Assembly (NCBI GenBank): GCA_964252035.1
Contig: OZ176207.1
Length of the DNA: 64,000 nt
Strand: one strand, 5' to 3'
Source of the DNA: Podarcis erhardii
Taxonomy: Eukaryota
The notes below the pieces were generated by a model. That model was not told where the DNA came from and made no database searches. It worked only from the letters and a program-made list of their open reading frames with translations. A program made the position numbers and the translations under genes. Each line of letters starts with the position of its first letter. Within the stretch, counting starts at the first letter, position 1. Of the stretch, positions 7,809 through 58,094 are shown piece after piece.

Positions 7809-7889
7809 ATGGTGCTACTAGCTGTAAGATGGTCTAAAGGCAGCATCTTATGTAGAGCTATCTGGCTACAGCTTCTCTTCAGTCTACTG
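7809..7889 (+). CDS. DSC1: Gene A exon 1 (signal peptide MVLLAVRWSKGSILCRAIWLQLLFSLL)
   Basis: ATG, 27 codons, CTG|GTGAGT donor, phase 0 as in DSC exon 1; not in ORF track. Confidence 0.8.
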
Positions 7890-9899
7890 GTGAGTAGAAC
7901 AGAATGTTGAATTGGTTGTATATCAATAGTAAGTAGTCAGAATTCATCATGAAATAAAGGGACCAAATAAAATCTATGTAGATATTTGTATTGAACTATT
8001 CTTTGCCAAAGACTACGGCCATTATAGAGCTGTTCTCTGGAGTATGGTGAGAATAGTATCTGCTAAAATAAAGAACATCTGCTTTATTTTATGTAGCTGA
8101 TGTAGTTTTAAATATGTTGCATGTCTTAGTACAGGAGACATCCCTTACACTGACTCTTGGCAATGCTGAATACGAAACAGTTGCTATTATTATTTAAACT
8201 TCTTGCAACAATTCCAGTATGCCTTTCTAATTGTCAAAATAACACTGAAAGTCTAAAGATCATTGTGGGGTCCTATTTATTGTTTTTAAAACGGTATGCT
8301 AATAAGCTGATTACATCTAAAGTAATTGATGCATGGAACTGTTTGGTACAGTTTACTGGAATCACTGTGTTCCAGCATCAGGGATATTAATTTTGATTTA
8401 AGGAACTTTAATATTCTGATATCAACAAACTTTTGAGAGGTCTGGAAAGTTACCATCACAGAAAATGTCTAAGCCTGAAATCCTGTGCCCATTTATCTGG
8501 GAGTAAGCCCTAATGAACTTAAATGAATTTACTTCTGAGTAGATATGAATAGAATTGTGCTCTAAGTATTCTATATTAATTTCTTTGCATCAGGTATTGG
8601 CTCTCTTCAGAATTTTTTAGAAGGGGAAATACTCAGTGACAGATAATATCAGCAGGATTGTTTCTGCATTTGTACTGAAATATTATAATAAGGATTATGC
8701 TAAAATAAATGAGTTTTTATTTGATTCTTTGGGCAAAGTCCTAGTTAAATGTGTGTGTGTGTGGGGGGGGGGACAATTTCTGGTTTTGTTAAATTCTCTT
8801 GTATTTATTTCTTGTGGGAATTTATGGTCAGTAAATTATTGCTGAGATCCTATCCTGGCTATGTATTGGAAGTGGTTTGTAATATTTAATAAGAATATGA
8901 TTGCAGATAGAGATATTTATGGTCATTCTGAACAAGGAGTCTGTTATGTTACTCTATTTACATAAAATAAAAAAGGAGAAGAAAAAGCAGAGAGCCAATT
9001 GTCAGAAATGATGGGAGTTGTAGCCAATAAAGGCCACAGATTTCCTACCCCTGAGGCAAAGGAAATGAGACTGGGGCCAGACCACAAATCAGGAGAAATT
9101 TGGTTCGGTATTAGAACTTGTACTAAATAAAATAAAACAAAAAGTTGGAGATAAGGAATTTATGAAAAACCTGGCCATGTCAGGGACACAACAGGAGTGC
9201 AATATGTAATGCACATCATCACATTTAGGAACTTCCAGGAAAAGACTCACATCCTTTCACTTCAGTCAATTCAAACCATTAGGAAGGCATATGGTATAGG
9301 TCATATATGACTGTACAACTTCTGAATGAATGTGGGGCGGGGGTTGCTTGTTTTTAGTTTTGGCTGAGATCTGAAGGTTTGTGTCTGACTCTTACACCTT
9401 GTTTGGGCCTTTGGATTGGAACAACTATTGACTAGTTGCAAATACACCCTTTTGGGAGAAGGTGATAGAGGCTGTGGTGGAATAGCTGCACATTTTTGGA
9501 GGACACAGATTATCTGGGCCACAGAACCGAGTTGCTCTTGGTCGTCTTGATGGATGACCTCTGCAGAGTGTGACCTTGCTCCTGCTTCTTGATCTCTCAA
9601 CAGCATTTGATACCATCAACCAAGGTATCCTCCTGGAACAACTCCAGGGAATGGGAATTGCAGGCACCATATTACAGTGGTACCTTGGTTCTGAAATTTA
9701 ATCCATTCCAGAAGTCCGTTCCAAAACCAAAGCATTCCAAAACTAAGGTGCGCTTTCCCATAGAAAGTAATGCAAAATGGATTAATCCGTTCTAGACTTT
9801 TAAAAACAACCCCTAAAACATCAATTTAACATGAATTTTACTATCCCATGAGACCATTAATTCATAAAATGAAAGCAATAAACAATGTACTGCAGTCAC

Positions 9900-9930
<31 letters not shown>

Positions 9931-12900
9931 GTAGCTGAACTGGGTTTCACACAGTCACAAAAACAAAACAAAAAAGCCACAAAAACAAAAATGCAAAATA
10001 AATAGCAAAAACAGACAGACCTCAGCTTAACAATCAAAACGGAAGTGTGGCACTCAAATCAGAAGTGTAACACTCAAAACAGAGCATGTTTGGCTTCCAA
10101 AAAATGTTCACAAACTGGAACACTTACTTCTGGGTTTGCAGTGTTTGGGTTCCAAGCTGTTTGAGTACCAAGGCATTTGAGAACAAAGGTAGCACTGTAC
10201 AGTGGTTCTGATCCTACCTTTGGGACCGAGTTCAGAGAGTAGCATTGAGAGATTGCTATTTAACATCTCCATTGCTATTTAACATCTCCATTGCTATTTA
10301 ACATCTACATGAAGTCTCCATTGCTATTTAACATCTACATTGCTATTTAACATCTACATTGCTATTTAACATCTACATGAAGTCACTGTGAGCAGTCATT
10401 GGGAGTTTTAGAGTGAGGTGCCAGCAGTCCCCCCTTGCCTCCACAGGTCCTCAGCAGTCCCCCCTTGCCTCCACAGCGGCCCCTCTAGGAGGCACTGCTG
10501 GTCTCCTTCCACCCTGCTCCCAATGTTATTATTTATCTCACCCTTGTTCCTGATGTAAACCTTGACTCCCTCTTCTTCCCTGGTGATGGGAGGGGGGCAC
10601 CATTTTATGATTTGCCTCAGGTGCCAAAATGACTTGGGCTGGCCTTGAAGCAGCAGGTTCACAGTTTGGGGATGCTTCTAGATCCAGCTCTGTCACTAGA
10701 GGCTCAGACAGCCGCAGTGGCTAGAAGTGCCTTTTACCAAGGGCAGCTGGTTCAACAGCGACGGCCATTCCTGGACCAGGAAAGCCTTGCCACAATAGTT
10801 TATGCGTTGGTAACTTCAAGACTGGACTATTGCAATGTGCTCTATGTGGGGGCTTCCCTCACGCTTGATGCTGAAGCTGCAGCTAGTGCAGATGTTTATA
10901 AAATTTGTAGGAGTTTTAATATTTTTAGTCTTTTATTGTGGTTTTAACCTTTTTATGTTTTAAATTACAGCTGTATAATTTTTAGTTACAATTTCATTGT
11001 TTTATCCTTTTTGTAAACCACTGAGGTTTTTTCTACAAGCAAGCAGTATATAAATATAAATAAATAAAACAAAGGGAAGCTTTGTAACACATGGTTTGCA
11101 ATATATTTCCCCCTAGTCCATTCATACATCTTGAATGTGATTAGATGCTGAATGATACATCATTTACTTTTTACCAGAACTAATATTCTCTTCCTGCATT
11201 TGCTTGCTTTAATGATGTCTCTTGCAAGTGCAATACAAATATTGGTGGCTTGTAATACTAATCTGAAATACGATACAAGAAGTCTGGCTTCCAAAGTTCT
11301 TCTCTAAGTATTACAAAATATGGTCTGGAGAATAATATACATCCAGCTTCCTGCCGACTCCCTTACCCACTTAATTTCCTTGCAGCTTCAGAAATGGTGG
11401 AATGGAAACAGGAAGCGGGTCCCTCTCCATTCTTCCTTGGTTCCTGACTAATGGCCATAGCAGCAAGTAAAGCATAACAGAAAGAGTGAAGAGGGAGATA
11501 CACTCCTGTCACTCTTGCTTCAAGACCACCATTGTAGGAACACCAAACCTAGTTAGTGGGAAGACAGGAGATGGCTTGCAAACAGATGGTAAAATCATGG
11601 GAAGAAGGAAGGGAATTAAGGGGCTCACTGGGCTGGGGGAAACTGTTGCATTCCTGAAAATATAATTAGGGATATGAGGGATGGAGTTTGAGTTTTTTTC
11701 CCAGTTTTGAGGGAAACTGTTCCATATTCCAAGCCCAGTTTATTTATTTATTTCACTACATTTATACAGTATATCACTTGACTGCAATAAAATCTCTAAG
11801 CAGTTTGCAAAATTCCAAGGACAATATTCTTCATTACTGATATGTTTAATTCTCTCTCTTTGTGTGTTAACTTTTAGTAGAGCCTTTGAGTAGAGTCTCT
11901 TATTTGGTGTAAAGGAACCTGAAGCAACATATATTTTGAAGATATATGAGATCCATTAATGGACATTTTGCTTCTCAAATGAACCCTTTACAATTCACTG
12001 GTCTTTTGAATTTGGGGTCAGCAAAGAAATTTGCTGGAATGAGGAATACAGGACTGGGCTATGAGAACTCTACAGTTCCACTGATGTAGATGTTTGTTGT
12101 CATCAAAGCAAACTAACTGCTGAATACTTTTAGAATTTAAATAACAAGCCAATCAATACAAAGTTTGTATTGAAATAATTTTGTTGCTTCATGAAAAAAG
12201 AATATTTAAGGTTTTGGTCTCTCTCTCTCTTTAAGGTATTGAGTTTATCTTCTGAAGCTTGCAAGAAAGTAACTTTTCATGTCCCTCATAATCTAAAGGC
12301 AGGGGCATTTGTTGGCCAAGGTGAGAATCCAATAATGCGTTGTTGCTGTTGTTGTCAAATATGTACTATTTGAAAACCAATAATATATAGGGAAATTAAA
12401 ATTTAACCTGAGTTGTTTCCAGATTCTGGAGTTCAAATTCTAAGGTTACCTAAATTATCCTACATATTATGTGAATTGTACCGATCCGGAGGACAATAGG
12501 TTATGGGGAGTGCCCAGACCACCTGTGCCATCAACAGCTAATTAATTTTTGGCCAGGGCAGTGGGGACTCCTCTGCCTGTATATCATAAATTTGATTTGG
12601 CACTAAATACAGTTTTAGGCACCTTTGTTTGGAATTACGTCCTTGTAAACTATTTTTCCTCCTCATTTCAACTAGTCCTTTAAATTTATATTTTCCTACA
12701 GTAAACATGAAACAGTGTCTTAATCATTCTGAAATTATTTACTCAAACAATCCCAATTTCACAATTCAAGAAGATGGCTCATTGTATACAACAAGGGATG
12801 TTTCCCTGACTTCCCATGAAATCATCATCACCATATTTCTTAAAAGCAATCATGAACAGGAACAAAAGAAGATACATATTAGTTTGCTCACACATTCCAA

Positions 12901-15900
12901 AAAGGTAAGCATATCTGATTTGCATCAGTATATCTTATCCTGCTTTTTTCTGCTCTTTTCACTTCTTCCTCATCTTTTAGTGCTGCTGTTTTACTTTGAA
13001 GGACAATTTTCATGACTCTGTGATCAGAATCTGAATGTGTATTCCCATATGCTACAATTATCCTAGAAGTCAGGAAGTCTTATTAACTGTTAAAATATTT
13101 GTAATTCTAGCAGAGAGATAGACACAGAGGGACTGAAAAATAAAGTGATGCAACACATAGGGTGGCATCCAACTTAATCAGAGGAGACCCATTGAAATCA
13201 ATGGATTTAGGTGCCTTGAGTATGACTTGGCTGAATACTGCTCATGATTGCTATTGTTGTTTGCTTAGTTATCTCTCCCGTTCTTCTAGGTCCCAATAGC
13301 AAAGGCAAGACATTTACGAGATACTTTTCTTAGACGGACTAAACGGAGATGGGGTCCTGTCCCAACTATTTTAATGGAAAACTCACTTGGACCTTATCCA
13401 ATGCAGATTCAACAGGTATGTTTTAAATTCACCTCTTCATTTTTACTTTTCAAATTATCAGTCAAGGATTTTTGAGCAGCTTGGCATATGTTATAAGTGA
13501 TCAGTAACAGAACTTCAATCAATAGGAACTATGATTGAAGCCTTCAGATACACAGCATACTCTCTGCCCCCCAATTCTTGCTAGGCAGCCAAGAACTTTA
13601 CTGTTAAACACATCGTTTGTGTCTATAAATGTCTACCCCATCTGGTAAACTCATCTGTCTGGGGGAATTGTTTGTTGCATCACTGCTGCTGATATATACA
13701 TTGCTGCAGAAATCTGGGATTAGGGAAACCAGTTTGTCTCTGCCTACATCTTTTGAAGAAGCTTGTAATTGCAATGTAAATATCTAAAGTCAGCTATTTA
13801 ACACCAGAGATGGAAATCCATTTAAATGCTTCAGCTTTTGCCTGGAAGTACCAAGGAAACAACAGCTTGAGTCTGATGGGAGTTCAATATAAGGCTTTTA
13901 CATTTGTAAGCAACTAGCTATGTGGAACAGCCTAATCATATGAATTCTCCCTACTCTCACCAGGAACATGGTAAGCAAGTCACAAGCATTTTAGACTTTA
14001 CATGGAGCTACTATCACATGAAACATTTATTTCCTGTGTCCATAATATTTGAATTGATGTGTAAATATTTTGTTTTTGCATCTTGGGATTGCTAACGGAT
14101 TCTGAATAAATAGACAAGAAAACAAGATTTTGTTAATTATTATTTCTGTTTCAAATTGGTTTGCATTTACACAGCTGCTTTCCGACACATCACTAACATA
14201 CGATATCAGATACTCCATAAGTGGCCATGGTGTTGACAAACCACCATATAATTATTTCTACATAGAGGAGGACACTGGAAATCTATTTGTTACCTGTCCA
14301 ATCGATCGGGAAGAGTACCCAGAATTTCAGGTATGGGTTTCAGACTTCTGTTTACATATTTACTGATAAGTAACAATTGGACAGATCCATGGTATTTCTT
14401 TTACTAAAAGTTTCTCTGAACAGGGCTGCCTTCAGATGTTTTCTAAAAGTTGTGCAATTCTTTATCTCCCTGACATCTGATGGGAGGACATTCCACAGGG
14501 AGGGCCCCCACTGCTAAGAAGGTCCTCTGCAGTATAGTCTCCTCAAGGTAAAGAATTAAAAATGAATGAACAGATGCAACAATTATCTGTTGCAGCTGTC
14601 TGTATGTTACTTTTTTGACAGGTAACTGCATGATTGAGGGAAACACGCGGGGAAATGAGTTTTCAAACACTGTATCCACTACAGAGAAGCTGTTTTTGGT
14701 AGCCTCACAATGTTTACATTAGTCCTCAGTTCTTCAGTAGAAGGTGAGAGGGATTTGGTTGGTGAGCAACATGTAGAATCATCAACAGGCCATGCACAGC
14801 ATCAACTTGCCAATCAGAGCCAGATGTTCCTGTACATGTAAATAGGTGGGGGGAGAAGACTGATTTACTGGCTGCTAGCAGTACCAAGGCACTCAAGGAA
14901 ACCTGAGAAGGCATTTGTGGGTTTTCTTACAGATGAAAGATAGCAACCAGCCTGCGCTCACCCCAGCCTATTATCTTCCTTTACTTCACAGCTTTCTGAT
15001 AACACTTGCCCAATCATACTAGTGAAACAGTTCAGGAAAAGGTGAGGAGGCAAGCAGACACAAAGAACATGATGCTTGAACCAGGCATTTGACTGACTAG
15101 ATGTCTTTCCTCCTAAACTGTTGTTCTGGGCTGCTGTGTTGATATTTTGTCATTGGCTGTATTGTGGTTTTATTTTATGATTTCAATGAAAATTGTACTT
15201 CCTATAACCATTCAGTAAAGAGGAGACTACAATAATAAATATATAAATACTAACACTCAAGGTGCAGCGCCAATTGATGGGGATATATATGAAAACTTGT
15301 CCACAAAGATGGATTATAGTTGAACCAGCAAAAAGGTACTTGCCCCACCTTCCCTTCACTGTTCCCCTGTGGTCTTTCCTATCTTTCCCATATCTCCTTC
15401 TTCCTTCATCTCTCCTTTCCATGGCCCAAATGGCTGTGCCTAGTCCCTTATTTGTTTCCTTGCCTCAGACCCCTGTTCCAACACACAATTGCCTTGCACA
15501 AGTCCTTCTTTCCCAGGCCATTCAATGGACTACTTTATTTGACCATTGCTTCCTCTGTACTTTACTTTGTATGACGCACAACTCCTTTGTACCTCCTTCC
15601 CATGGCTCTTGGACTCTGTCCATTTCCTCTTATGCCACTTTACCTCATGTCCCTGCCTCCTTTCTCGCTTCTTCTTAGTCCAACTCAACTGTAGCCTATC
15701 CTTATGTCTGTTTTTAAATGCATATTCTCTGGGAGATCATGGGGACAGAATGTCCCATGCTTTTCTGGATGTACAGTTGGACTGCTCACCACAATGGCCA
15801 CACACAGCATATAACAGCCTGTTCACCTTGGCAGATTCCTGTTTAGAAACTTGGACTGAAGTAATTGTGTCCTGATTTGTTAAAAATATTTTTTTTCTGC

Positions 15901-18900
15901 TTCAGATCAACTAGCAAATAAAAGTTTGTTTGTTTGTTTGCTCTCTTTTATACAGTTGATTTGCTATGCAATGACAACAGATGGATATACACCAGAGATA
16001 CCGCTTGTGCATATAATTAGAATAGAAGATGATAATGATAATGCCCCAGTGTTTGAGCAGGACGTTTATACTTTTCTTGTCTTTGAAAACTGTGGAATTG
16101 GTAATTTTAAAAAACTTTTCTTTTTTAAATAAATCATGTTTAGTTTAGACAGCAATATTTTAAAGTACTAATTAAAAACTGAGGTGCTGTGAATTGTTAT
16201 GTAAGCTCCATATCATTTTTATTTGCTATAATTCTGAGCTTATATCTGAGTTCAGACAAATATTAATCTACATATAGCCCTATACAAGGATTCTGATTCT
16301 GGTTAGAGTAATCATGTAACAGCCCCCATCCTCAGTCACACGGGGATGAGAGGCCTACCTCCATCTTCATAGCCATCATTTTTGTTACTCTACATAGGAG
16401 CCAACTCCTAGGGGCTGGGGTGTGTGTCTTTGCTCCCCCAGTAAAATATTTGAGGGGGTCAGGGGCCCCTAAGGGTTATGGGTATTGCCATCCAAATGGC
16501 TTCCATGCAACGTATCATGTGAAACGATTATGCAGGGCATAATTCATTCAAGTTGGCACCCCCTGTTGCTCTCCATGAGTTAGAGGGCAACTGTGTGAAA
16601 TGGGGAGCCTTCTATACTTGTGGAGCCTCCCCATGCATTTTAAAATACTGATTTTCCAGGTGTCTACAAGCCCTACAAATACAGTAGGTTCCCTGCTTCC
16701 CACAATTGCTCTCTAACTGATGAGAATGATGATGAGTAAGCATGACACTGGTAAAGTCATCTCCAGAGTGTACCTGTCCCCCAAATGAGTTGTTGCTATA
16801 ACCAGCAGGAGAACTTCGGTTTCTCATCAAAGAAAGGGTGGTGAACTACTGTTCAACAATGCAGTCCTAAAATAACGAACTTCACTATTTATGCAGTAGG
16901 AAGTCCCCAACAGCGGGGGAAACCAATCTGTTTCAAATAAGAATATAGAAAGATGCATAGACAGATATATCTGTTTCGTTGATCAAATGTTAAGAACGGT
17001 TATATTTCTCTACAGATGTTTTAAAATAGGTATACTTAGGTATACAAAAGTGATTTTTTAAAAAAGAATTCTGACATATATGCCTGGATTTACATGTTTA
17101 GATTAAGTGAAAAATCACCACATCTAAATAATTATTTTAAAACTATTTTATGAAGGAAAGCTGGAAATTTAAAGATGATGTATTGTACATGCAGGGACGC
17201 TAGTTGGACAAGTGACTGCAACAGACAATGATGAGCCATACACCCTACATACTGAAGTGAAATACAGAATTGTATCCCAGGATCTTCAAAGTTATCAGAA
17301 TTTAAGGGTATTTGCTATAAATCCAGATTCAGGCTCTATTACGGTGGTAACATCACATCTGGACAGAGAGGTAAATTTCCTGTGCACCTAGCCTTCATTC
17401 ACATGCCAAAACTCTATCAAGAAGGGCAACTTGGAGCTTTTTAGAGGGAAGGTAGATTTTAAGTGAAATAAATTGGTACATCGCCATGCAATTGTTGTTT
17501 AGGATCAGAATGTGAAGTCATTCTTGCTCCCTCTTTAAAAAAATACGGAGATGTGTTTGATGTTGCAAACAGATCATTTAAAGCATATATTGCTCAAATG
17601 CTATTTTGTAGGCTCAAACAATGCCAAGCTGTTTTTTTTCAATGCAGCATCCATCATCTTGGCTAATATTATACAAATGTGTAACTATCTGAAGAACTGC
17701 GCAGTCCCATGGTCTCTGGTTTTCCTTTTCATAAAATCTTGTGATTTCAATCAGAACAGGGAAATTATGTTTATATATTCTTTTTAATGCAGACAACACC
17801 AGAGTATAAGCTACAAATTGAAGCAAGAGATATGGGAGGCCAGGAATTTGGTCTGTGCACTACAGCACAAGTTATAATTACAGTTGGAGATGTAAATGAC
17901 AATGCTCCACAATTAGAACAAAATGTGGTAAGTTTGTTATTGTTAAAATTCAACAGAGCTTTAAAAAACGTGGGGACCTCCTGAGAAGCCAGCATTTCCT
18001 ATGGTGTAAATGTAATCATAATAAATGTTAAATTGAGGAAAAATATAATTATTTGCATTTTAGCTATAGAGAATTCTATCAGGATGAAACATGTATTTAC
18101 AGAATCATTGTCAAGACTATTCTATTTCTCTGAATCCTTCAAAATTACAGCTTTGTTATAGTGCAATCCTACAGATATCTGCCCAGAAGCATGGCCTATT
18201 AAATTCAGTTGGGCTTACTCACTGGTACATGAATATAGGATTGCAGCCCAAGTCCCAAAGTAGCAAAAGTATGTGTCTATCAGATTCTACTCTGTTAGAT
18301 GCATGAAGGGTTAACCTCAGTTTGCAGCTATATAGACATGTGGGTAAAAAAGAAGAGGTGGGAGTGGAATGCTATTACCATGTCTGGCCAGGAGGCCACT
18401 AAAACAAGAGATACATGTGTCCTATTACTATGGTAACTAAAATACAAATGCAAACAAGGCATAGATGCAAACAAATTCCCATCCTAGGGGTAAAGTATCA
18501 ACTCAAGAGTTGATGTGGTCTAATCTCCAAAGATAATGAACAGGAAAAGCAAAATGAATAATACTGTATATGTAAACACCAAGGGACAATCACATCCTGT
18601 AGTGAGCTAGCCATTCCCATTTGCGGCTCATTTCAGGTCTGGTAGTGTCAGATCTGCACAAGGCTTGAAACTCTGCAGCTTCACCACTGGAGTTAAAATA
18701 TTTTATTGTTGCCTTTGGAAAATCATTTCACTGTTCTAGAAGTGTTTATTAATTGCTTATTTGAAAACGTCATTTCAGTATGAAGTGAAAATATATGAAA
18801 ACGAAGAAAATATAGAAATATTGTGCATTCCTGTAAGAGATAATGATGAACCTGGGACTCCTTCATGGTTGGCTGTATTCACAATTATAAAAGGAAATGA

Positions 18901-21900
18901 AGATAATGTTTTTTCTATGAATATTGATCAAGAGAGGAATGTCGGGTGTTTACTTGCTTTAAAGGTAAATGCAGATGGGGAAAAATTACCTATGGTACAA
19001 AGGTATATTACTAATGGGAATCATCTAGAGTTTTTTTTGGAAATTATTTGATGGTATGCAACATAATTTTAAGCCCTGAAAGGCTGTTCTTGAAATGTTA
19101 TATTTGTAACTATTTTCCAAGGGTTCCCAAGCTTGAAATCCTCTAAAGGAAATTTATCCATGGTTTATGCAATTTGGGGGAAATAAGCAAGTATGAGGAA
19201 AAGGAAGGGCGGCAAGAAACTTAATGAAATTGCAAAATACCAATTGATAACTATTGTGTGGAATCCAAAAGGTGCCATTCCACTAATGGAAGGAATCCAC
19301 TATACCAACAGGGAGGCAATTTTTGAAGACTCCCTATGCAGCCCACATCCCTTTAATCTACTCTACAGGGTCCCTGGCCAGAGAAATCACCCCAAAAAAT
19401 TGTCCTCTCCCTGTTCTGCTTATGCATGTCTTCTGTCAGCAGAGTGACACCCATTGGATTCCACTCATTATTTTTACCATATTTGTTCAAAGTTTATAAC
19501 TGCAACCCAGTAATAAATATTGTGTTAGTTTTAACAGAAATGTGTTTGTTTCCAGGGACTGGACCATGAAACTTCCAAGGAGAGAAGATTAGAAATTGTT
19601 GTAAATAATGAAGCACCTTATATCCTAGCACCAAATTCAAGAGCCCCATCAAGAAACCCCACCACAATTGTCATTGAAGTTATGGATGTGGATGAGGGGC
19701 CAACATTTGCCACTGAATATATTATAACTTTAAGGGAATCTTTCCCAAAAGGAACAGTGGTTGGAATCTATCAAGCATATGACCCAGAAACTGGAGATAG
19801 CACAGGCATAAGGTACACTTTTAATTATAACACAGTAATTTGGTTTATAGATTGTGGTTAAAAACAGGGAACAATTATAACTGGTTTATATTATCACATT
19901 GTACTAATGGTATACAACCCTCCTAAAATGTTCTCAATAGTTACGGAATAATAAATGACCCATGCAACTGGATCACCATTGATGAAACAGGACAGCTGAT
20001 AACCACTACAATTTTAGACAGAGATATATTAAATGAGGAATACAGTCAATGCATTGTAACAGTCTCTGCAACTGACCAAAGTGAGTAACAAATGCTTGTA
20101 AACTGCTGATTATGCTATCTACATATTTGCAGTAGTATTTTGTATCTTACTTTTTAACCACAATTTAAGATACAAAGTATTTTGTATCTTACTTTTAAAC
20201 CACAAACTCCATCTTCTGTTGCTGAACTGAATTCCTAGTTTGTTGCCCTGTTGCCACAGAAATAAGTCTAAAAGCTAGCTTTAATCCATGAGAGAGAGAG
20301 AGAGAAATTCTTATAATTTTCTATATTTGGGGCAGAACTTTTTTTCCACTACTACATATTTCCACAGATTAGCTGAAGCCTGCTACTGTGTCAGTGTGTG
20401 ACTATTTACAGCATTAAATCATGAAAAACTTCCATTTTCCAGGTGGTAAAACAGGTCAAGGGAAAATTGTGATAAACATCATGGATGAGAATGACAATTT
20501 CCCAGTGATTATGACAAAGAATTACACCATGTGTAAGGACAAAACACCAATTTGTATTACGGCCTTTGATGCCGATCTACCTCCTTACACTGGACCTTTC
20601 CATTTTGAAATAGAGAATCGAATGGGCTTAACATGGAGGTTAACACCGAATGATGGTATGTACATGGTTTTCCCTGTCCCACTTCTGTAATAACAACTGT
20701 AGCTAACAGAACAAATAATGTAAAAATGTTCATCATTGCACAATTTGTTTTACAGATGAATCAGCATTGCTTTCACCCGTGGAAGATATTGACTATGGCT
20801 ATTATATAATACCTGTTAGGATATATGATAATGAAGGTAACAGTGGAATAAGTGAAATAACAGTTCACTACTGTGACTGTGACATTCCAAGTAATTGTTC
20901 TGAACGCAGCACAGTCGCTGCTCTGGAGAATGGGGCAATCCCTGTAGATCGCGTTCCATATCAAGCAGAATCTGCTTTTGGTCCCTGGGGCATTGCTGCA
21001 ACAGTCCTTGGATCAGTATTATCACTGTGTAAGTATATCGCTCTCTTATAGATGATATACAAAATGAGCCATTAACTCCAGTCTGTTGCAAAACTGCTTC
21101 TCCCTTGACTCTTCCTTGGAGTTCTAAATGTTCAGTTAAGGTGGCTTAGTCCCATGTTTGTGTATATAGGTATGTTAAATGGAAAATGCACATAGCAATT
21201 GGCTACTGTGCACATTCACCAGGTGTCCTGGAAAATGTGCACATGTCCATAAAGATGGACTTCTGCACATTTCCCGGTCAATTTGTACAATCCACAACAA
21301 GCTTTGGGCATTGTGCATGTATCAGCTACATTAGGTATGTTCTCTGGCCAATATGCATTATCTCCAACAGGCTTTGCAAAACGTGCATATCTCAACTGCA
21401 TTCTGTACATACATGCTGACTGTTTGCTGTTTGGGAGAACTAGGCCTCTTTTCCAGAGCTATCAAATCTTCCAAAGGAAGAAAAGGGGGGGGGGGAATGC
21501 CCTGAATTGAAAAATCATGCGTAGCATTTTATTATTAGAGGTACTCATTAGATTTGTACACCACCCTTCATCCGTAGATCTCAGGGTAGTTCAGAGCATA
21601 AAAATACAAGCTAAAGACACAAATAAACATAATAAGAACAAGAAGAAGCCAAACCAAACCAATAACCTCCTTCTGCTCCCCCCAAAACATTTAAAACGCT
21701 ATAGGATGTTAATCAGCCAAAGGCTTAGTTGAAGAGGAACATTTTAACCTGGTGCCCAACGGTGTATGATGAAGGTATCAGCTGAACATCCCTGGAGAGA
21801 GCATTTCACAAATGGGGAGCCACCCTTTACTTTATTGTATTTACTTCTCCAGCCCCCCACTTCCTGAGGTACATGCCAGCCTCCGATGCTATTTGCTTTA

Positions 21901-24893
21901 TAGAAAATATGTAACAATTTACTTATTGTTTACTTATTTAAATTTACTTATTTAAATTCAGTTCCCTTCATGCATGACTTTGAATCACATAATTAAAAAC
22001 TAAAGCTCAGATTATGTGTATTTCTTTCTACAGCAGGGATGATGGTACCCTGTGGTTACTGGCTCCATAAAAGAAATTCCAATACTGAAGAAGCGCCTGG
22101 AGAAGCACCTGGAGAAGCGTCTAATAATGCAGCTTTTGAGAACTTAATGATGTCAAACACAGAGGCACCAGGTGAAGAAATGACAGTAAGTAGCATTTTT
22201 TGGCTAAAAGTTATGAAGTTCCATACTGCATTTGCTTTCTAAAAAGTGGGGTGTGGGTGGGTGGGTGCACACTAAATATTAGAGTTGCTGTGTTACTATA
22301 AAAGGGGAAAAACATGCTTGCAATGTTTTATCTTTTTAGTGTGTGTACTTTTGAGCTAACTCCTGCACTGTGGGTGTGAGAGAGCGTGTGAGTGAGAGAC
22401 AGAGAAAGGTAGGGGATCAGTAAGAAGACTGCTGGGCACCCAAAAAATTCCAAAACATAAGGTGGTATTCAACTAAGTTTTATTCGGAATATACACATGG
22501 AAATTAATGAACATGGCTACGTTTCTGGGTTCAGAAAAGATTGGGATTCATTTTCTTGGGTTTGGAAGTCAAGTTAAGCCAACTCTACGTGCCAAATAAG
22601 ATGGTGGGCAGTAAGTTAGCTGCAGCACTTTATCATGGTTATAAGAGGACCTACAGGTTGTAATGTGGCCTGGTGCTGCAAAATGTATTTCTGGATCCTG
22701 GAATGGCATGCAGGCAAGAGAGTTGCTGAGTTGTGGAGATGGTAAGGCCCACAAGTTACTGCTTTGAGTTGGTATGGGATATGTATACATAATGGGGAAA
22801 ATAGTTGGTTTGGGTTCAGGCCCTGTTTTTCCGAGAATTCAGGAATCTTATCTCCCAAACTATAGATGGTAAAAAGAAACTGCTGCTTCTTTTACAAAAT
22901 TCTGCTGTTATCTTTCTTTTCAGGTTCTAAATATACTTCCAGTGAGCACACTGAATACAGCTGTAAGCATGGGCACAGTTGCAGAGAAAACTGGAAAGCA
23001 GGAAAGTTTGGAAGTGATAAAAGGAGAAGGCCATCACCCACCAGAATTGGTCAAAGGTGGAGGAAATAAACTGGCAGCATCTTTACATGACATCAGAGGG
23101 CAAAGCAAACCAGAATTAGTCAAAGGAGGAGGAAAACTCTTGGCATCATCTTTACATGATATTACAGGGCATCACAAACCAGAACTAGTCAAAGGCGGAG
23201 GAAATATCGTGGCAGCATCTTTACATGATATTAGAGGGCTTCGCAAACCAGAATTAGTAAAAGGCGGAGGAACTCTATTGGCAGCATCTTTACATGATAT
23301 CAGAGGGTATCGCAAACCAGAATTATTCAAAGGTGGAGGAAATCACTTGACAGCATCTTTACACAATATCAAACAACCCATACGGAGTTCCTCCAGGGAT
23401 TTGTGCTCACAATGGCAGGAATTTACCAATCCTCATTTAGCTAAAGTAAGCATTCTGATACAGATTTCCCATGGTTTATGTTTGGATTAATGTTAAGACT
23501 ATCCACCATAGTGTGATATATTTCAGTTAAGTAGCTACAGTTCATATTCTGGATTTTAATATTGGCTGTAGCTCTCTAGTTATTTGATGCACTTGGGCTG
23601 TTTTACTGGAAAGATCCATGTTGTTCATGCTTGTGAGGTGTTTGTGTGGCCCACAATTATTAATATATTTCCAAAAAAGAGTCGAAGGTCACTCACAGCA
23701 TAGTATACTGTTAAAACAATACAATAAAAGCTAAAAATTCAGTTATAATACTAAATAGCGTAAAGCAGTGAGATAAAACATAATCCATAAAGATGACAGC
23801 AGAAAACACATCAATACCATCAATTAACGCCTCATACAATCAGCATAAAATAGTATCAGTCACTTATCAAGCAAGGCAACATAGCCCAAAGAGTGGGGGA
23901 AATCAGATCACCTTCCTTTGGGATGCTGTTTCAGAGCTTTGGTGCAACTACTGAGAAAGTCCTACCTATTCAAATGCTTCCATTATTTGAATGCAAAGCC
24001 TAATGCTGATGCTCAAGGTATCCCACAGTTCTTGCCATCAAAATTTTAAAAGGAAACTGAGAAAAGAAAGCAAGCCCACAGATCCTGTACTGACCAGGAA
24101 GGGGGCATTTTGTTCACTGCCCAGGCATTCTGTTGGATGAAGGGTGACATAAAAACACAATAAATATTAATAAATAGGCGGCCAGAAAATCCGTTTCAAC
24201 CCGATGATTCTATCCTGTGTAGTATGGGATAGATTGACACAAGAAGCTGATCATTGCCTTTAATAAATAGTATGCAAACTGCATTGTTATGCTTTATAGA
24301 AAGGGATTTAAATAGTATGAATCATATACATGAATTATATTCATCTTTGTATGCAGGAACCAGTTAGAAGCTCTGATTTATGTTTAGGTGCATTTAAGAA
24401 AATGGTTAACATGTACTTTCTTTGTGTGCAGAAGGTGTTTTTGTGTGAACAGGAGGAAGAATGTAAACGTGTCGGCGAATATGTACATTCATATAAATAT
24501 GAAGGAAAAGGATCGCTGGTTGGTTCCCTAAGCTCCTGTACTGGCGAGTCATCATCAGAAGAACTTGAGTTTTTAAATGAGCCAGAGCCTGCTTTTAAGA
24601 CATTGGTTGAAGCCTTTGTAATGAAGAAGCATGCTTCCATTGGTTCTGAAACCCACCTGCACAATTCTACAGGAAGCTATGTGCTGACTTCCACAGTTGG
24701 AGGCAGCAATGCTTCTGAATACCAGCTGCTAGAAACCACAGGACAGAAGAGTGCTCTCGTGCCCAGAACGTGCTTGCTGGTTTCCCAAAGGCAACTTGTT
24801 GGCCACTGTGAGAACAGGATGCTGGACCAGATGGGCCACTGGTCTGACACAGCAGGCTCGTCTTATCTTCTTAACTCCATTGAAATGAATTAA
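7809..24893 (+). CDS. DSC1: Desmocollin gene A (DSC1-like), 16 coding exons, ~1103 aa, with remodelled cytoplasmic tail
   Basis: Exons 7809-7889, 12236-12320, 12702-12904, 13290-13415, 14175-14330, 15956-16100, 17195-17370, 17793-17927, 18779-18964, 19556-19812, 19941-20080, 20443-20655, 20756-21028, 22034-22185, 22924-23445, 24432-24893 join in frame (3312 nt), all GT-AG. Signal peptide ending QLLFSLL resembles mammalian DSC1. Also furin site RRTKR|RW, DxNDN/LDRE/PE cadherin Ca2+ motifs, TM segment and YEGxGS tail motif. The symbol rests on signal-peptide similarity and gene order, so orthology is tentative. Confidence 0.9.
9675..10197. mobile_element. Tc1/mariner (Tigger-like) non-autonomous element
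   Basis: TIRs CAGTGGTACCTT / AAAGGTAGCACTG with TA duplication on both sides; contains (ATCA)n. Confidence 0.75.
10252..10384 (+). repeat. 19-bp minisatellite (TTGCTATTTAACATCT[C/A]CA), 6 units in 2 higher-order blocks
   Basis: Read directly; each three-unit block ends in TGAAGTC. Confidence 0.9.
12236..12320 (+). CDS. DSC1: Gene A exon 2 (VLSLSSEACKKVTFHVP...)
   Basis: 85 nt, same length as gene B exon 2; AG/GT boundaries. Confidence 0.9.
12702..12904 (+). CDS. DSC1: Gene A exon 3 (prodomain)
   Basis: 203 nt, NPNFTIQEDGSLYT motif, AAG|GTAAGC. Confidence 0.9.
13290..13415 (+). CDS. DSC1: Gene A exon 4 (furin site, mature N-terminus RWGPVP)
   Basis: 126 nt, LRRTKRRW...MENSLGPYPMQIQQ, CAG|GTATG. 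Confidence 0.92.
14175..14330 (+). CDS. DSC1: Gene A exon 5 (EC1)
   Basis: 156 nt, YSISGHGVDKPP...IDREEY. Confidence 0.92.
15956..16100 (+). CDS. DSC1: Gene A exon 6 (EC1/EC2)
   Basis: 145 nt, ICYAMTTDGYTPE...IEDDNDNAP. Confidence 0.92.
17195..17370 (+). CDS. DSC1: Gene A exon 7 (EC2)
   Basis: 176 nt, VGQVTATDNDEP...LDRE; not in ORF track. Confidence 0.92.
17793..17927 (+). CDS. DSC1: Gene A exon 8 (EC2)
   Basis: 135 nt, EARDMGG...DVNDNAP. Confidence 0.92.
18779..18964 (+). CDS. DSC1: Gene A exon 9 (EC3)
   Basis: 186 nt, YEVKIYENE...IIKGNED. Confidence 0.92.
19556..19812 (+). CDS. DSC1: Gene A exon 10 (EC3/EC4)
   Basis: 257 nt, GLDHE...VNNEAPY...DVDEGP...AYDPETG; not in ORF track. Confidence 0.92.
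19941..20080 (+). CDS. DSC1: Gene A exon 11 (EC4)
   Basis: 140 nt, [13 protein letters not shown]...LDRD...ATDQ. Confidence 0.92.
20443..20655 (+). CDS. DSC1: Gene A exon 12 (EC4/EC5)
   Basis: 213 nt, GKTG...MDENDNFP...AFDADLPP. Confidence 0.92.
20756..21028 (+). CDS. DSC1: Gene A exon 13 (EC5 and start of TM)
   Basis: 273 nt, HYCDCDIPSNC...FGPWGIAATVLGS, T|GTAAGT. Confidence 0.9.
22034..22185 (+). CDS. DSC1: Gene A exon 14 (TM end, juxtamembrane)
   Basis: CAGCAG tandem acceptor (exon start 22034 or 22037), [19 protein letters not shown]|GTAAGT. Confidence 0.88.
22924..23445 (+). CDS. DSC1: Gene A exon 15 (cytoplasmic, 5x 23-aa repeat)
   Basis: 522 nt open frame, ends WQEFTNPHLAK|GTAAGC; homologous to the 270-nt gene B exon 15. 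Confidence 0.9.
24432..24893 (+). CDS. DSC1: Gene A terminal exon (catenin-binding segment plus 88-aa extension)
   Basis: TGCAG|AAGGTG acceptor, KVFLCEQ...YEGKGS...LEFL, open to TAA at 24891-24893. Confidence 0.85.
   Translation, partial: KVFLCEQEEECKRVGEYVHSYKYEGKGSLVGSLSSCTGESSSEELEFLNEPEPAFKTLVEAFVMKKHASIGSETHLHNSTGSYVLTSTVGGSNASEYQLLETTGQKSALVPRTCLLVSQRQLVGHCENRMLDQMGHWSDTAGSSYLLNSIEMN
24675..24875 (+). mobile_element. CR1/L3-type LINE 3' UTR fragment inside the coding extension of gene A
   Basis: GGCCACTGTGAGAACAGGATGCTGGAC..TGGGCC..TGGTCTGA..CAGCAGGCTC..CTTAT is the reverse complement of intergenic/intronic copies at ~29200-29330 and ~35458-35700. Confidence 0.75.
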
Positions 24894-26033
24894 TGTTCTT
24901 GTACCTCCCTAGTTCATCCCAATAGGATTTGAGCAGGAAAGCATGGCCTACTGTAGGCTGTCCCCATTCACATCTCCCCCCCCCCCCATTTTTTATTTAA
25001 GTAGGCTCTAAAAGAGTTGATTTAGTGGGTTTTTAAAAAATAATAATTGAGATTCTGAAATTTGACCTAACTGCACAAAACAGTTTTAAGCTCAGGTGCC
25101 TAATTTTATATTTTTAACAAAATGTAGTTTCGTCCTTATCTTTAAAAACACCCTTTGGAAACAGTAACACTCTATTATTTCAATTTCAATATTATCTGTC
25201 ACATGTCTAGTAAATAGAAAGTATTACTTGGTTTAGTGTCTCTTTTCAAAGACTTCTAGTAATAACCATGAAATGCTACTGGTGTGCATGTTATAGTATT
25301 TTCTTAGTTTCTTACTTATATTAATTGCTTATTTATATTCTTTTAATTTCTTACATATCATCTGTGTACTGGGTTCTGAACTAAGGTTCTGAACTAAGCC
25401 AGAGCATAGTTGCCTAGGAAGTCCAACTGAAATCAACACAACTCATGTGCATAACAATGTACTGGATACAACGTTTAGATTTTATAGCCTGAACTGTGGA
25501 AATAAGATTAAATTGGAATGCAGCACTAGTCCACTAGCAAATAAATGCCATTAAAAGCCCTCCATACTTTATCTCTGTCCACACAGCAGTTGTAAGCATG
25601 CAGTTATTTTTCTGTAGCTCCTCCTGCAATGAAATAAAAAATAAAGCCCTCATGCCGTGTGTGTATGAGAGCAATCATGTGCAAACTGCTGCCAGGCCCA
25701 CACGTCACATGCTATTTGCCTTTCAGATCCTTTTTCACTCTTGCCTCTGGCTTCTGTCCATATTGATTAGATTATATGGCTTGGGGCAAGTGCTTGAAGA
25801 ATCATAGCAATAACAAGGACTACTGATATGTCTAACATTTGCCTGGTGTTATATTTGGTTCCTGACCACAAGGTAATTGAACTTGAGCATAAAATGAAGA
25901 TCAGCTAACCAAGCAAAAAACTAAATTTCAGATACATTATGTATTTTCTAACATTGTAAACAGTGAGGTCAAAAGGCCATGAAATCAAATTCAAAAAGTT
26001 TTGTATGCAAAGCTCAGGTCAGTGAATACATCA

Positions 26034-26168
26034 GCCTTTGCCAACCTTGTGCTTTCCAGATGTTTTGGGCTACTACAAGTTCCCATCATTCCCAAGCAAC
26101 ACAACCATACTAGCTGGGCTGATGGGAATCATAGTCAAAACATCTGGAGGGCACCAAGTTGGCAAAGA
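26034..26168. mobile_element. Older relative of the palindromic hAT MITE (similar copy at ~1530-1655)
   Basis: CCAGATGTTTTGG..CCCATCA / TGATGGG..AAAACATCTGGAGGG inverted arms. Confidence 0.7.
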
Positions 26169-27660
26169 TAAGTATGCAAGACTGGCATAGCAACCTTTCA
26201 GAAATAATCTTTCTTAACATTCTAATATTCTCAATTTTATCTAAGCTTTACCAAAATGCATTAAGGCTGTTTCCATACACTTATTCCAGATGAGTGCTGT
26301 TCTGGATTGAAATAAAAGAGAGTTACTGATATTTCATCAACAAGGTTACTTTTGAGAACTGCCCAGTCGCTAGCTTTTTCAGACCTTTAACCTAAACATG
26401 CATTTGGAGGCCCATTTCTTAATTTTATACAGTGTATTTATTTGGTGATGGTAGTGCTGCTGTTGTGACCCAGCAGTGAGTCCTGACCCACTGGATGAAG
26501 ACAAATGGCCTAGTTGAATATATATATTTCTTCCTTGCTGATTATTTTAAATATCTGATCAAGTTTTGTTCTTTCAAAAATAAACTGGCATTTAAACAGG
26601 AGCTCATTTGTTTTGTATGCTAAAAATATTAATATACTTCTGTATAATAGTCACATCATAAATTAATGTTGTACAGTATGACTGAAAGTGACCTGTTATG
26701 ATTGTAAGCTGCTTGTGGTAATGGGAAATGCTGAAAGCAGAATATGACAAAGTTTCTTCTCATGACACTTCTGCAGTGAGAAGGAATTAGAACACTGCCC
26801 TGCAGCCTCTAGGAACATAACTCAGAACTGTGCCTCCCATACCGGAAATACTACCCTGACAGGGTAAAGTGTATCTTCCAGATGCCTTGAGAGATGTTTA
26901 AGGCATTGTTTGCACACTTTTACATGTAATTTATTAATTGCCCAAATGTCAACCCTAACAGACATGCATGCAAACGCAGCAGTCTTCTTCTACTCTACTA
27001 CATTAGGCTGCTTTCATGTTGCTGAAATTGAGGCTTTTCCTGCTGGACCAATTATCTGTTTTGACAGTGCTGATGGTTTCGGAGAGTAGAAAAAGCTGAT
27101 GACTAGAATAAGAGCTGTTCAGTGCTGTGGGCAAAACTCCTACCCAGCTACAGTTACAGCAGATAAAACCCTAAAAATATGGTGTAGATTTCCATGCCCC
27201 TAATCCAGATGGGTGATTTGTGTGCAGAAAACATGATTTTGTTCAACTGTTTCCTTGTTTTATCTACCAAAGAAAACAGCTATTTGGACTAATATAGCTA
27301 AGTAGACCATTAAAATCTCTGCCTGTTTTGCATCTTTACAAAATTGTGCTTATTTGTTACGACAGCCTTATAAAAGGCAGGAAAATGTAGTAATATAGCC
27401 CCAATCTGTGGCAAAATAGTTGATCGTAAAAGCAGCTGGGATCCTTTTGCTGTGATAAAAAGGGTGCCTGTGCACACTTAGCTTCGCTGATCTTCTGCTA
27501 TCAGAATATATTGATTTATATATTAAAGTTTTCATGTTTTAAAATGAGGCCTAGTTCTCTAAAACTGTGGATAAGGACACATTTGGGGCAGATGTGTCAT
27601 GTGAATTAATCCTCTTCTATTCACAAAAGGATCTGGTATGTAGAAAACAAAGGAGTGAAG

Positions 27661-27796
27661 CAGGCACCCCCAAACTTGGCCCTCCAGATGTTTTGGGACT
27701 ACAACTCCCATCATCCCTAGCTAACAGGACCAGTGGTCAGGGATGATGGGAATTGTAGTCCTAAAACATCTGGAGGGCAGAGTTTGAGGATGCCTG
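27661..27796. mobile_element. hAT-type palindromic MITE (same family)
   Basis: Same internal hairpin; 8-bp TSD GAGTGAAG/GAGTAAAG. Confidence 0.88.
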
Positions 27797-31284: not shown

Positions 31285-31560
31285 AGTTACAGATAGGTAG
31301 CCGTGTTGGTCTGCCATGGTCAAAACAAAATAAAAAAAATATCCTTCCAGTAGCACCTTAAAGACCAACTGAGTTAGTTCTAGGTATGAGCTTTCGTGTG
31401 CATGCACACTTCTTCAGATACCCACTTCTTCGTATACCACTTCAGATACCCACACTTCTTCGTATCTGAAGAAGTGTGCATGCACACGAAAGCTCATACC
31501 TAGAACTAACTCAGTTGGTCTTTAAGGTGCTACTGGAAGGATATTTTTTTTATTTTGTTT
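31285..31560. mobile_element. Penelope-like element end with 99-bp perfect inverted repeat
   Basis: GATAGGTAGCCGTGTTGGTC..GTAGCACCTTAAAGACCAAC..GAGCTTTCGTGTGCATGCACACTTCTTCAGATAC resembles squamate Penelope termini; arms 31323-31421 and 31462-31560; flanking 14-bp direct repeat CCTCCCTATAATCC. Confidence 0.8.
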
Positions 31561-57308: not shown

Positions 57309-58094
57309 ATGTGCTGACAACAACAATGCAGAGAATTGTCGCCCTTTCCACAGGATAGCAACTTGAATACAAAATATTTTTATCTCTCCCCCCCCCCCCA
57401 CTTTTCTCATGGGAGTAGTTAATCAGAAGACATTCTGACATTAGGTTTGTCAGTATCAAACTTTCTGCTCTTAAACCTCTGGATGCTATTTGACCTACCT
57501 ACATGTGTACTGCCTTAGATTTACACCAAAAAGTATTTTTTTAAACCAAATGTACAGACAATATTGTAGTCACATAACTTTTCAAAATAGCAACAGAGTT
57601 TCTAGTGTTCTCTGCATCTACCGTTACAGGGAGGCAAAATGCATTCTTTATCATTTTAAGAACTGAGCTTCAAAAATTTCTGGCTGTTTGGGTCTGGGTT
57701 ATAGCAAGCATGGTTTGATTCATATGAATCTTTCCTTTAGTTTTATAGAAATAAACGCTAAATACTACTGCTGAATGTTAAAATAGTTATTCATTTCTTA
57801 CATTCTTAAGAAAAACAGGGTTTCTAAGTATTTTTTTAAAGTGGGATCTCTAACAAAATTTGCAGCCAGCCATGACCTTTTCTCGAATACTCCACACCCC
57901 CCTACAGTTCCAGTTCCCCCAAAACACAGCTTATTGTGGCTACTGAGCATGCATGCATTGAGCCGATTTGATTCTCCCTTTACATTTTTCTTTTTAAGCA
58001 TATTCACTAACCTGATGAGCACCTCCTCCTTGAGTATGGACAGTGTTGCTTTGATTATGTAATGATTGATACTCATAGAATGCGTTCATTATTA

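What the first reader, a model, noticed from the sequence alone, without database searches (positions are those of the whole stretch)
24627..24893. Stop-loss extends gene A by 88 aa, about 66 of them from a LINE 3' UTR
Seen: the terminal exons of genes A and B align without gaps for 65 codons. Where gene B has TAA, gene A has AAG (24627-24629, one substitution from TAG) and stays open for 88 more codons. About 24675-24875 is the reverse complement of CR1/L3-type 3' UTR copies at ~29200 and ~35458, ending at the CTTAT-type tail. An 88-codon stop-free stretch has roughly 1-2% chance under uniform codon usage ((61/64)^88). Inference: transposon sequence has been recruited as the C-terminus of a desmosomal cadherin, just distal to the plakoglobin-binding segment.
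Basis: partly seen in the sequence, partly recalled or inferred. Interest (0 to 1): 0.75.

Follow-up and report, generated by a model that had tools for sequence, protein, structure and literature searches.

The report
Lizard desmocollin tail extended by retroelement
In wall lizards and their relatives, one desmocollin (cell-junction cadherin) gene lost its stop codon through a one-base deletion and now reads 88 extra codons, 61 from a retroelement tail. The change is real, expressed and already in RefSeq, but nothing shows the new tail has a function.

Summary
The last exon of gene A (24432-24893, + strand) aligns codon for codon with that of gene B for 65 codons. It has AAG (24627-24629) where B has TAA, and stays open for 88 more codons to TAA 24891-24893.

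It is not an assembly error. Independent assemblies of Podarcis muralis, Lacerta agilis and Zootoca vivipara carry the same open frame with no indel. Spliced RNA contigs join 23445 to 24432 and cover the exon at high depth. RefSeq already predicts this tail (XP_028594399).

Outgroups change the mechanism. Rhineura, Hemicordylus, a gecko and paralogue B have 8 nt ending in TAA where lacertids have 7. The stop was therefore lost by a 1-nt deletion and frame shift, not a TAG>AAG substitution.

Rhineura and Pogona show an empty site for a 184-nt insert (24690-24873) flanked by a short AACT duplication. The insert is a 5'-truncated, sense-oriented 3' UTR of a very high-copy CR1/L2-type LINE. It supplies 61 of the 88 codons; the other 27 come from the old 3' UTR.

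Tests for constraint are not significant: 16 non-synonymous against 11 synonymous changes, and P(no stop by chance) = 0.44. No fold is predicted. The tail is best read as tolerated. Interest is modest.

The parts
7809..24893 (+). Gene A coding span. It is the orthologue of RefSeq 'desmocollin-1-like' XP_028594399 of Podarcis muralis.
   Evidence: tblastn of P0075 covers all exons without stops. The last five exons are joined in frame by RNA contigs. dN/dS of 2157 nt of CDS among lacertids is 0.15-0.31.
24432..24626 (+). Conserved part of the terminal exon: 65 codons, the catenin/plakoglobin-binding segment.
   Evidence: RNA joint 23445->24432 with GT..AG ends at depth 712. PF01049 match, E = 2.5e-8. 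Ungapped alignment to gene B 57111-57305.
24622..24629 (+). Site of the lost stop. Between the anchors GTAA and GCATG there are 7 nt here, where outgroups and gene B have 8 nt ending in TAA. AAG 24627-24629 occupies the old stop position.
   Evidence: Alignment of the window, 3 other lacertids, Rhineura, Hemicordylus, Pogona, Anolis, Sphaerodactylus and gene B.
24627..24689 (+). First 21 codons of the extension. This is former 3' UTR, homologous to the 3' UTR of Rhineura, Hemicordylus and Sphaerodactylus and to the read-through of Pogona.
24690..24873 (+). 5'-truncated 3' UTR of a CR1/L2-type LINE in sense orientation. It supplies 61 codons (codons 22-82 of the extension).
   Evidence: Empty site in Rhineura and Pogona. 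About 12,000-fold excess depth in DNA runs, and genomic copies continue upstream of 24690. Copies in Rhineura and a gecko. A longer Rhineura copy ends an ORF about 25 nt upstream of the point corresponding to 24690. Stem-loop plus short TCTTATGT-type tail.
24686..24689 (+). 5' copy of the short target-site duplication. It reads AACT in the other lacertids and GACT in the window.
   Evidence: Rhineura has a single copy, GTGCTAACTCGATTG.
24873..24876 (+). 3' copy of the short target-site duplication (AACT). Its first A could equally be the last base of the element.
24828..24830 (+). CAG codon at a position where two of the four other copies of the repeat on hand have TAG in this frame. Without this difference the tail would end here.
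   Evidence: Copy alignment. tblastn shows '*' in the 29.2-kb copy.
24874..24893 (+). Last six codons (from 24873) and the present stop TAA 24891-24893. This is former 3' UTR. TGA 24886-24888 would have been the stop in the frame that held before the insertion.
   Evidence: Anolis ends at the homologous TGA.
24894..26012 (+). Present 3' UTR, at least to here.
   Evidence: RNA run X12 has depth of about 420-610 from 25028 to 26012, against 2-28 in introns.

Best explanation
Gene A is an intact, expressed desmocollin of a Podarcis-like lacertid. Two events lengthened its coding sequence, in an order that cannot yet be resolved.

(1) A 1-nt deletion at or just before the ancestral TAA removed the stop and shifted the frame into the 3' UTR.

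(2) A 5'-truncated copy of the 3' UTR of a very abundant CR1/L2-type LINE (184 nt, sense orientation, short AACT duplication) inserted about 60 nt downstream.

The element copy is open in the new frame, and it carries CAG where the family often has TAG. Translation should therefore run through 21 old-UTR codons, 61 element codons and 6 more old-UTR codons to TAA 24891-24893.

The state was fixed before Podarcis, Lacerta and Zootoca split. It is carried by the major mRNA. It most likely yields an 'a'-type desmocollin with an unstructured 88-residue C-terminal tail that is tolerated rather than selected.

Shown: the DNA events, their phylogenetic distribution, splicing and mRNA coverage. Inferred: translation, and the lack of function.
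For: The same 88-codon frame, same stop and no indel occur in independent assemblies of P. muralis, L. agilis and Z. vivipara.

RefSeq XP_028594399 ends with the same tail.

Spliced RNA contigs give the joint 23445->24432. A contig covers 24432-24717 at depth 737, and another covers 24809-25760 at depth 604.

Outgroups with the normal stop are Rhineura, Hemicordylus, three geckos and paralogue B.

Repeat copy number and 5' truncation are.

In a search of 1.84 billion representatives, every desmocollin hit ends 1-2 residues after query residue 63-64. Residues about 85-150 match only short ORFs of 62-168 aa.

The gene body is under purifying selection, with omega 0.15-0.31.

For the extension, there are 27 substitutions, 16 non-synonymous and 11 synonymous. 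Simulation gives P(syn >= 11) = 0.16 and P(no new stop) = 0.44. Its dN is 2-3 times that of the gene body.

Mean pLDDT is 45.5, and the tail has no Pfam match.
Against: No peptide or ribosome-profiling evidence was available, so translation of the tail is inferred.

No single displayed RNA contig bridges 24717-24809, because assemblies break in the repeat. Continuity rests on equal depth on both sides and on the RefSeq model.

The extension has no indel in three genera, whereas the adjacent 3' UTR has 6-13 pairwise indel events per 650-780 nt. The Poisson probability of none in 264 nt is about 0.03-0.09. Pairwise omega is 0.35-0.6. Some constraint therefore cannot be excluded.

The L. agilis RefSeq model splices out of the tail after its 40th codon. 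Isoforms may therefore differ between species.
Confidence: 0.8

Rival explanations
1. The element-derived tail has been domesticated. It is kept by purifying selection as a new functional module of the desmocollin tail, for instance modulating plakoglobin binding or adding a partner site.
For: The frame is open and free of indels in Podarcis, Lacerta and Zootoca. The family's TAG is replaced by CAG. Pairwise omega is 0.35-0.6. Indels are frequent in the neighbouring UTR. The gene is highly expressed. The same tail also carries an amplified 23-aa repeat, so the tail is being remodelled.
Against: The excess of synonymous changes is not significant (P = 0.16), and an open frame is expected by chance in 44% of simulations. 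dN is 2-3 times that of the gene body. There is no domain and no confident fold. Many of the UTR indels lie in homopolymer runs, which the tail lacks. The stop of this paralogue was also lost in Pogona and in Anolis/Phrynosoma, each with an unrelated tail. This suggests that the C-terminal end is simply permissive.
Confidence: 0.13
2. The tail is mostly not made, because alternative splicing or polyadenylation removes it from the main product.
For: RefSeq's L. agilis model uses a donor at the position matching window ~24750 and a small exon about 1 kb downstream. An Ensembl P. muralis model leaves the exon right after ...VMKK.
Against: In the Podarcis-like RNA run X12, depth stays at about 600 across the would-be intron, against about 830 in the coding part. 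No such joint is among the best-supported ones. Even the L. agilis model keeps the stop loss and 40 codons of the tail, 19 of them from the element.
Confidence: 0.05
3. The missing stop is an assembly error or a polymorphism of this one genome.
For: None found.
Against: Three further independent assemblies from three genera have AAG-AAG-CAT at the site. DNA and RNA contigs of runs from several related organisms cover 24432-24717 with 0-1 gaps.
Confidence: 0.01

Closest known systems
Desmocollin 'a' isoforms (DSC1-3 of mammals; squamate 'desmocollin-1-like/2-like' RefSeq models)
   Same: Same exon layout, cadherin repeats and C-terminal PF01049 segment. Orthologues in geckos, Hemicordylus and Rhineura end 1-2 residues after that segment.
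   Different: Lacertid gene A continues for 88 residues beyond the conserved end. Pogona (39 aa) and Anolis/Phrynosoma (11 aa) have other, independent extensions.
Exonisation of transposable elements and C-terminal extension by stop loss or frameshift (known from Alu/MIR/L2 exonisation in mammals)
   Same: Non-coding element sequence becomes coding because it happens to be open in the frame that reaches it. The result is lineage-specific, and such tails evolve fast.
   Different: Here the element was not spliced in as a new exon. It sits inside the terminal exon and is reached by read-through after a 1-nt deletion at the stop.
CR1/L2-group LINE 3' ends (stem-loop plus short tandem-repeat tail; mostly 5'-truncated copies; PMC11303007 reports 97% of squamate CR1 inserts truncated and a few hundred overlapping exons per genome)
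   Same: The copy here shows 5' truncation, a 3' stem-loop, an about 8-nt repeat tail, a very short target duplication and high copy number. A longer copy has an ORF end of the '...LPQE.V.A....FK.GLDKF...' type.
   Different: No reverse-transcriptase-bearing copy was on hand, so the clade (CR1 versus L2) is not assigned.

Membership tests
Desmocollin (desmosomal cadherin, 'a' form) | Cadherin pro-domain, extracellular cadherin repeats, transmembrane segment and cytoplasmic tail | tested here: met
   P0036/P0075, which is near-identical to the window product (92-100% in clean exon HSPs; lower where an HSP runs into an intron or the tail repeat number differs), carries PF08758, PF00028 and PF01049. 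All exons are found intact in the window.
Desmocollin (desmosomal cadherin, 'a' form) | C-terminal catenin/plakoglobin-binding segment encoded by the last exon | tested here: met
   PF01049 matches residues 18-60 of the exon, E = 2.5e-8, above the curated cut-off.
Desmocollin (desmosomal cadherin, 'a' form) | Protein ends a few residues after that segment | tested here: not met
   88 further codons follow. All non-lacertid homologues end 1-2 residues after it.
Stop loss by point substitution in the stop codon | Same length and frame as the ancestor, with only the stop triplet changed | tested here: not met
   Lacertids have 7 nt where Rhineura, Hemicordylus, Sphaerodactylus and gene B have 8 nt. 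The downstream GCATG anchor is read in a shifted frame.
CR1/L2-group LINE 3' UTR | Interspersed high-copy repeat with defined 3' end and variable 5' truncation | tested here: met
   Depth is about 860,000 against about 70. Loose ends show that other copies continue upstream of 24690. Copies in the window, Rhineura and a gecko all end at ...TTCTTA.
CR1/L2-group LINE 3' UTR | Lies directly downstream of the LINE ORF2 stop | tested here: inconclusive
   A Rhineura copy reads ...LWSSLPQEAVMATNVGGFKSGLDKFMEDKTISGY* about 25 nt upstream of the point matching 24690. That this is an ORF2 C-terminus rests on my recollection of CR1/L2 proteins. No RT domain was on hand.
CR1/L2-group LINE 3' UTR | 3' stem-loop followed by a short tandem-repeat tail | tested here: met
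   The stem GCUGGAC...GGCC/GGCC...GAUCCAGC appears in the better-kept copies. The tail is TCTTATGT-TCTTA.
CR1/L2-group LINE 3' UTR | Clade assignment (CR1 versus L2) by reverse-transcriptase phylogeny or a repeat library | not testable with these tools
   No Dfam/Repbase was available and no full-length copy is in the sequences held.
Domesticated (exapted) transposable-element coding sequence | Purifying selection on the element-derived codons | tested here: inconclusive
   16 non-synonymous against 11 synonymous changes, P = 0.16; P(no stop) = 0.44. No indels against an expected 2-3.4 per pair.
Domesticated (exapted) transposable-element coding sequence | Evidence that the peptide is made | not testable with these tools
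   Only mRNA evidence is available.

The most novel reading that the evidence does not exclude
The LINE-derived tail, together with the amplified 23-residue repeat further up the same cytoplasmic domain, is a selected lacertid-specific remodelling of a desmocollin tail. It changes plaque assembly or plakoglobin binding in lizard epidermis.
Probability: 0.12. Interest if true: 0.55.

Novelty: new member of a known kind. Interest (0 to 1): 0.3.

Why it matters
This is a clean, datable example of how a coding sequence grows. A one-base deletion at a stop codon and a retroelement insertion together add 88 residues to a conserved, highly expressed junction protein, with an empty-site outgroup and a target duplication to prove it.

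It also shows that the extreme C-terminus of this desmocollin paralogue tolerates extension, because the stop was lost at least three times in squamates.

The practical value is mainly for annotation. The long RefSeq model is right, and the origin of its tail is now explained. It does not open a new biological question unless the tail proves to be under selection.

Tried and rejected
(1) My own alternative was that TAA 24891 is the ancestral stop and the 264 nt are an in-frame insertion. The idea came from the A/B alignment, where the distance from stop to poly-C is 76 nt in A and 73 nt in B. I rejected it because Rhineura, Hemicordylus and the gecko stop at the position of 24627, and the TTGAAATGA motif lies in their 3' UTR.

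(2) A word-based protein search with the 153-aa exon alone found nothing, because of the length window. It was solved through the representatives search and then a full-length gecko protein with 'region'.

(3) P0001 and P0018 are bacterial repeat proteins and are spurious.

(4) Looking up the partial protein P0002 found no contig.

(5) The intron alignment among lacertids was too poor to use as a neutral baseline. I used the 3' UTR and the gene-body dS instead.

(6) Raw RNA run X24 gave reads only on the repeat, none on the gene.

(7) No LINE ORF lies next to the in-window or Rhineura copies.

(8) A literature search for the repeat motif and for lizard desmocollins found nothing on this tail.

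(9) The letters at the differences within 24432-24717 in the runs were not displayed because the table was cut, and read laying could not be repeated.
Full report
**What is there.** The window holds two tandem desmocollin genes on the + strand. tblastx of one half of the window against the other pairs their exons: gene A at about 12.2-24.9 kb (first coding exon 7809-7892) and gene B at about 41.4-57.3 kb.

The last exon of gene A starts at 24432. In run X12 a spliced contig joins 23445 to 24432 with GT..AG ends at depth 712. The four preceding joints give an uninterrupted frame.

The first 65 codons align without gaps to gene B's last exon (57111-57305; 49% identity). Both match Pfam PF01049, the cadherin C-terminal catenin-binding segment. 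Gene B then has TAA. Gene A has AAG at 24627-24629 and continues for 88 codons to TAA 24891-24893.

**It is real, fixed and already annotated.** A search of 1.84 billion representative proteins with the 153-residue exon product gave two kinds of hit. Desmocollin hits all end 1-2 residues after query residue 63-64. Hits to residues about 85-150 are all short ORFs of 62-168 aa.

Through a gecko full-length protein (P0030) I retrieved squamate orthologues. Podarcis muralis XP_028594399 (1011 aa, 'desmocollin-1-like') ends with the same 88 residues; one version is identical in the tail and the other differs by one residue. The window is therefore a Podarcis-like lacertid, and RefSeq already predicts this tail.

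I fetched the loci of P. muralis, Lacerta agilis and Zootoca vivipara, which are independent assemblies. All three have AAG-AAG-CAT at the site, the same 88-codon frame, the same TAA and no indel. An assembly error or private polymorphism is excluded.

In RNA run X12 the exon is covered at depth about 830. A contig runs 24432-24717 through the former stop, and another runs 24809-25760. Depth stays at about 600 for more than 1 kb past the stop, against 2-28 in introns. No displayed contig bridges 24717-24809, because the repeat breaks short-read assemblies, so continuity there is inferred.

Across 2157 nt of the rest of the coding sequence, dN/dS among the four lacertids is 0.15-0.31. Gene A is therefore a working gene.

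**How the stop was lost.** I compared the DNA of Rhineura floridana (a worm lizard, and the nearest outgroup I could fetch), Hemicordylus, Sphaerodactylus, Pogona and Anolis.

- Between the anchors GTAA (ATAA) and GCATG, four sequences have 8 nt ending in TAA: Rhineura, Hemicordylus, Sphaerodactylus and paralogue B.
- All four lacertids have 7 nt (TGAAGAA; TAAAGAA in Zootoca), so the downstream anchor is read in a shifted frame.

The stop was thus lost through a 1-nt deletion at or just before TAA, together with two substitutions. It was not a TAG>AAG substitution.

Pogona also has 7 nt. It keeps TAA out of frame and reads KHAY... for 39 residues in the same shifted frame. Whether this is the same old deletion, later reverted in Rhineura, or a parallel one is equally parsimonious on the taxa I have.

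Anolis and Phrynosoma lost the stop by a deletion of about 43 nt and end 11 residues later. This paralogue's stop has therefore gone at least two or three times.

**The repeat.** Rhineura and Pogona, like Hemicordylus, Anolis and the gecko, lack about 184 nt that all lacertids have.

- Rhineura reads GTGCTAACTCGATTG across the empty site.
- Lacertids read GTGCTAACT, then the insert, then AACTCCATTG. This is a 3-4-nt duplication.
- The insert is 24690-24873.
- DNA-run depth over it is about 860,000 against about 70 beside it.
- Many genomic copies continue upstream of 24690 with a shared sequence, so this copy is 5'-truncated.

Other copies in the window (29.2 kb and 35.5 kb, minus strand), in Rhineura and in a gecko all end at ...TCTTATGTTCTTA. 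The better-kept copies fold into a stem-loop just before that tail.

A longer Rhineura copy ends an ORF (...LPQEAVMATNVGGFKSGLDKFMEDKTISGY*) about 25 nt upstream of the point matching 24690. From my knowledge of CR1 and L2 proteins, this is an ORF2 C-terminus. The insert is therefore pure LINE 3' UTR in sense orientation.

I could not assign CR1 versus L2, because I had no repeat library and no copy with a reverse-transcriptase domain. PMC11303007 reports that 97% of squamate CR1 inserts are truncated and that a few hundred overlap exons per Podarcis genome.

**Composition of the tail.** The 88 codons are made up of:

- 21 codons of old 3' UTR (24627-24689);
- 61 codons of LINE (24690-24872, plus one base of the next codon);
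- 6 codons of old 3' UTR.

Before the insertion, the shifted frame would have ended at TGA 24886-24888, giving a 24-residue tail. Anolis ends at the homologous TGA.

Two of the four other copies on hand have TAG where gene A has CAG (24828-24830). A second chance difference was therefore needed to reach the present stop.

**Is the tail constrained?** Parsimony on the four lacertids gives 27 substitutions in the 264 nt, 16 non-synonymous and 11 synonymous. I placed the same numbers of transitions and transversions at random. At least 11 were synonymous in 16% of trials, and no stop arose in 44%.

Pairwise omega is 0.35-0.6, and dN is 2-3 times that of the gene body. Divergence of the tail (5-9% between genera) is close to that of the 3' UTR (about 8%).

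The one hint of constraint is the absence of indels. The UTR shows 6-13 pairwise indel events per 650-780 nt, which predicts 2-3.4 per pair in 264 nt (Poisson P about 0.03-0.09). Many of those UTR indels lie in homopolymer runs, which the tail lacks.

AlphaFold2 on the four-sequence alignment gives mean pLDDT 45.5 with no confident element. Pfam finds nothing in the tail. I read the tail as tolerated, with domestication possible but unsupported.

**Isoforms.** RefSeq's L. agilis model leaves the tail after its 40th codon, using the donor AAGA|GT at window ~24750, and joins a small exon about 1 kb downstream. In X12 the depth over that interval is about three quarters of the exon depth, so this form is minor there.

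The event belongs to a known kind, namely stop loss plus exonised element sequence, and the protein model already exists in RefSeq. I found no description of its origin in the literature held here.

The scan's other notes on this gene (23-residue repeat, a/b switch) concern the same cytoplasmic tail. I saw the repeat in my own translation. I also saw that the spliced a-type joint dominates, at depth 737 for the spliced form against 19 for the contig running through the acceptor.

Noticed in passing
L005 (Pogona) 23493-23810; L007 (Anolis) 27221-27451: The same desmocollin paralogue lost its stop independently. Pogona has a 1-nt deletion before an intact but out-of-frame TAA, giving a 39-aa tail. 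Anolis and Phrynosoma have a deletion of about 43 nt, giving an 11-aa tail that ends at the TGA homologous to window 24886-24888.
   Followed up: partly
window ~24750 and 25726-25761; L001 22011 and 23129-23203: RefSeq's Lacerta agilis model splices out of the extension at a weak AAGA|GT donor to a small downstream exon (...HPAELINILKLHID*). The homologous exon in the window is cut by a 31-nt gap relative to related genomes.
   Followed up: partly
window 25759-25760: RNA run X12 carries about 31 extra letters here that the window lacks (table 5c), and contigs of DNA runs X1 and X16 are also broken at this point. This is a deletion in the window's genome or assembly.
   Followed up: no
window 24027-24461: An RNA contig runs through the terminal-exon acceptor at depth 19, against 737 for the spliced form. 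The frame is open from 24330, and Ensembl P. muralis models (P0071, P0080) use an upstream start of this exon. This bears on the scan's a/b-switch note.
   Followed up: partly
window 23035-23385: Five tandem 23-residue repeats (...KPELVKGGG..LAASLHDIRG...) lie in the cytoplasmic exon. P. muralis and the window differ in this stretch: residues 726-832 of P0075 were not matched.
   Followed up: partly
window 31323-31560: A perfect 99-nt inverted repeat (31323-31421 and 31462-31560) with a 40-nt spacer, in the A-B intergenic region.
   Followed up: no
window 27661-27796 and 26036-26167: Short MITE-like inverted repeats with the motif CCAGATGTTTTGGGACTACAACTCCCATCA, typical of squamate genomes. 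A related piece lies at 1537-1646.
   Followed up: no
window 33000-34300: A very GC-rich, CpG-island-like stretch lies about 7 kb upstream of the first gene B exon that I mapped. It may be the gene B promoter or first exon.
   Followed up: no
window 24969-24992 and 57381-57404: The 3' UTRs of paralogues A and B share a poly-C block and several short conserved blocks further on. This points to conserved UTR elements or past gene conversion.
   Followed up: no
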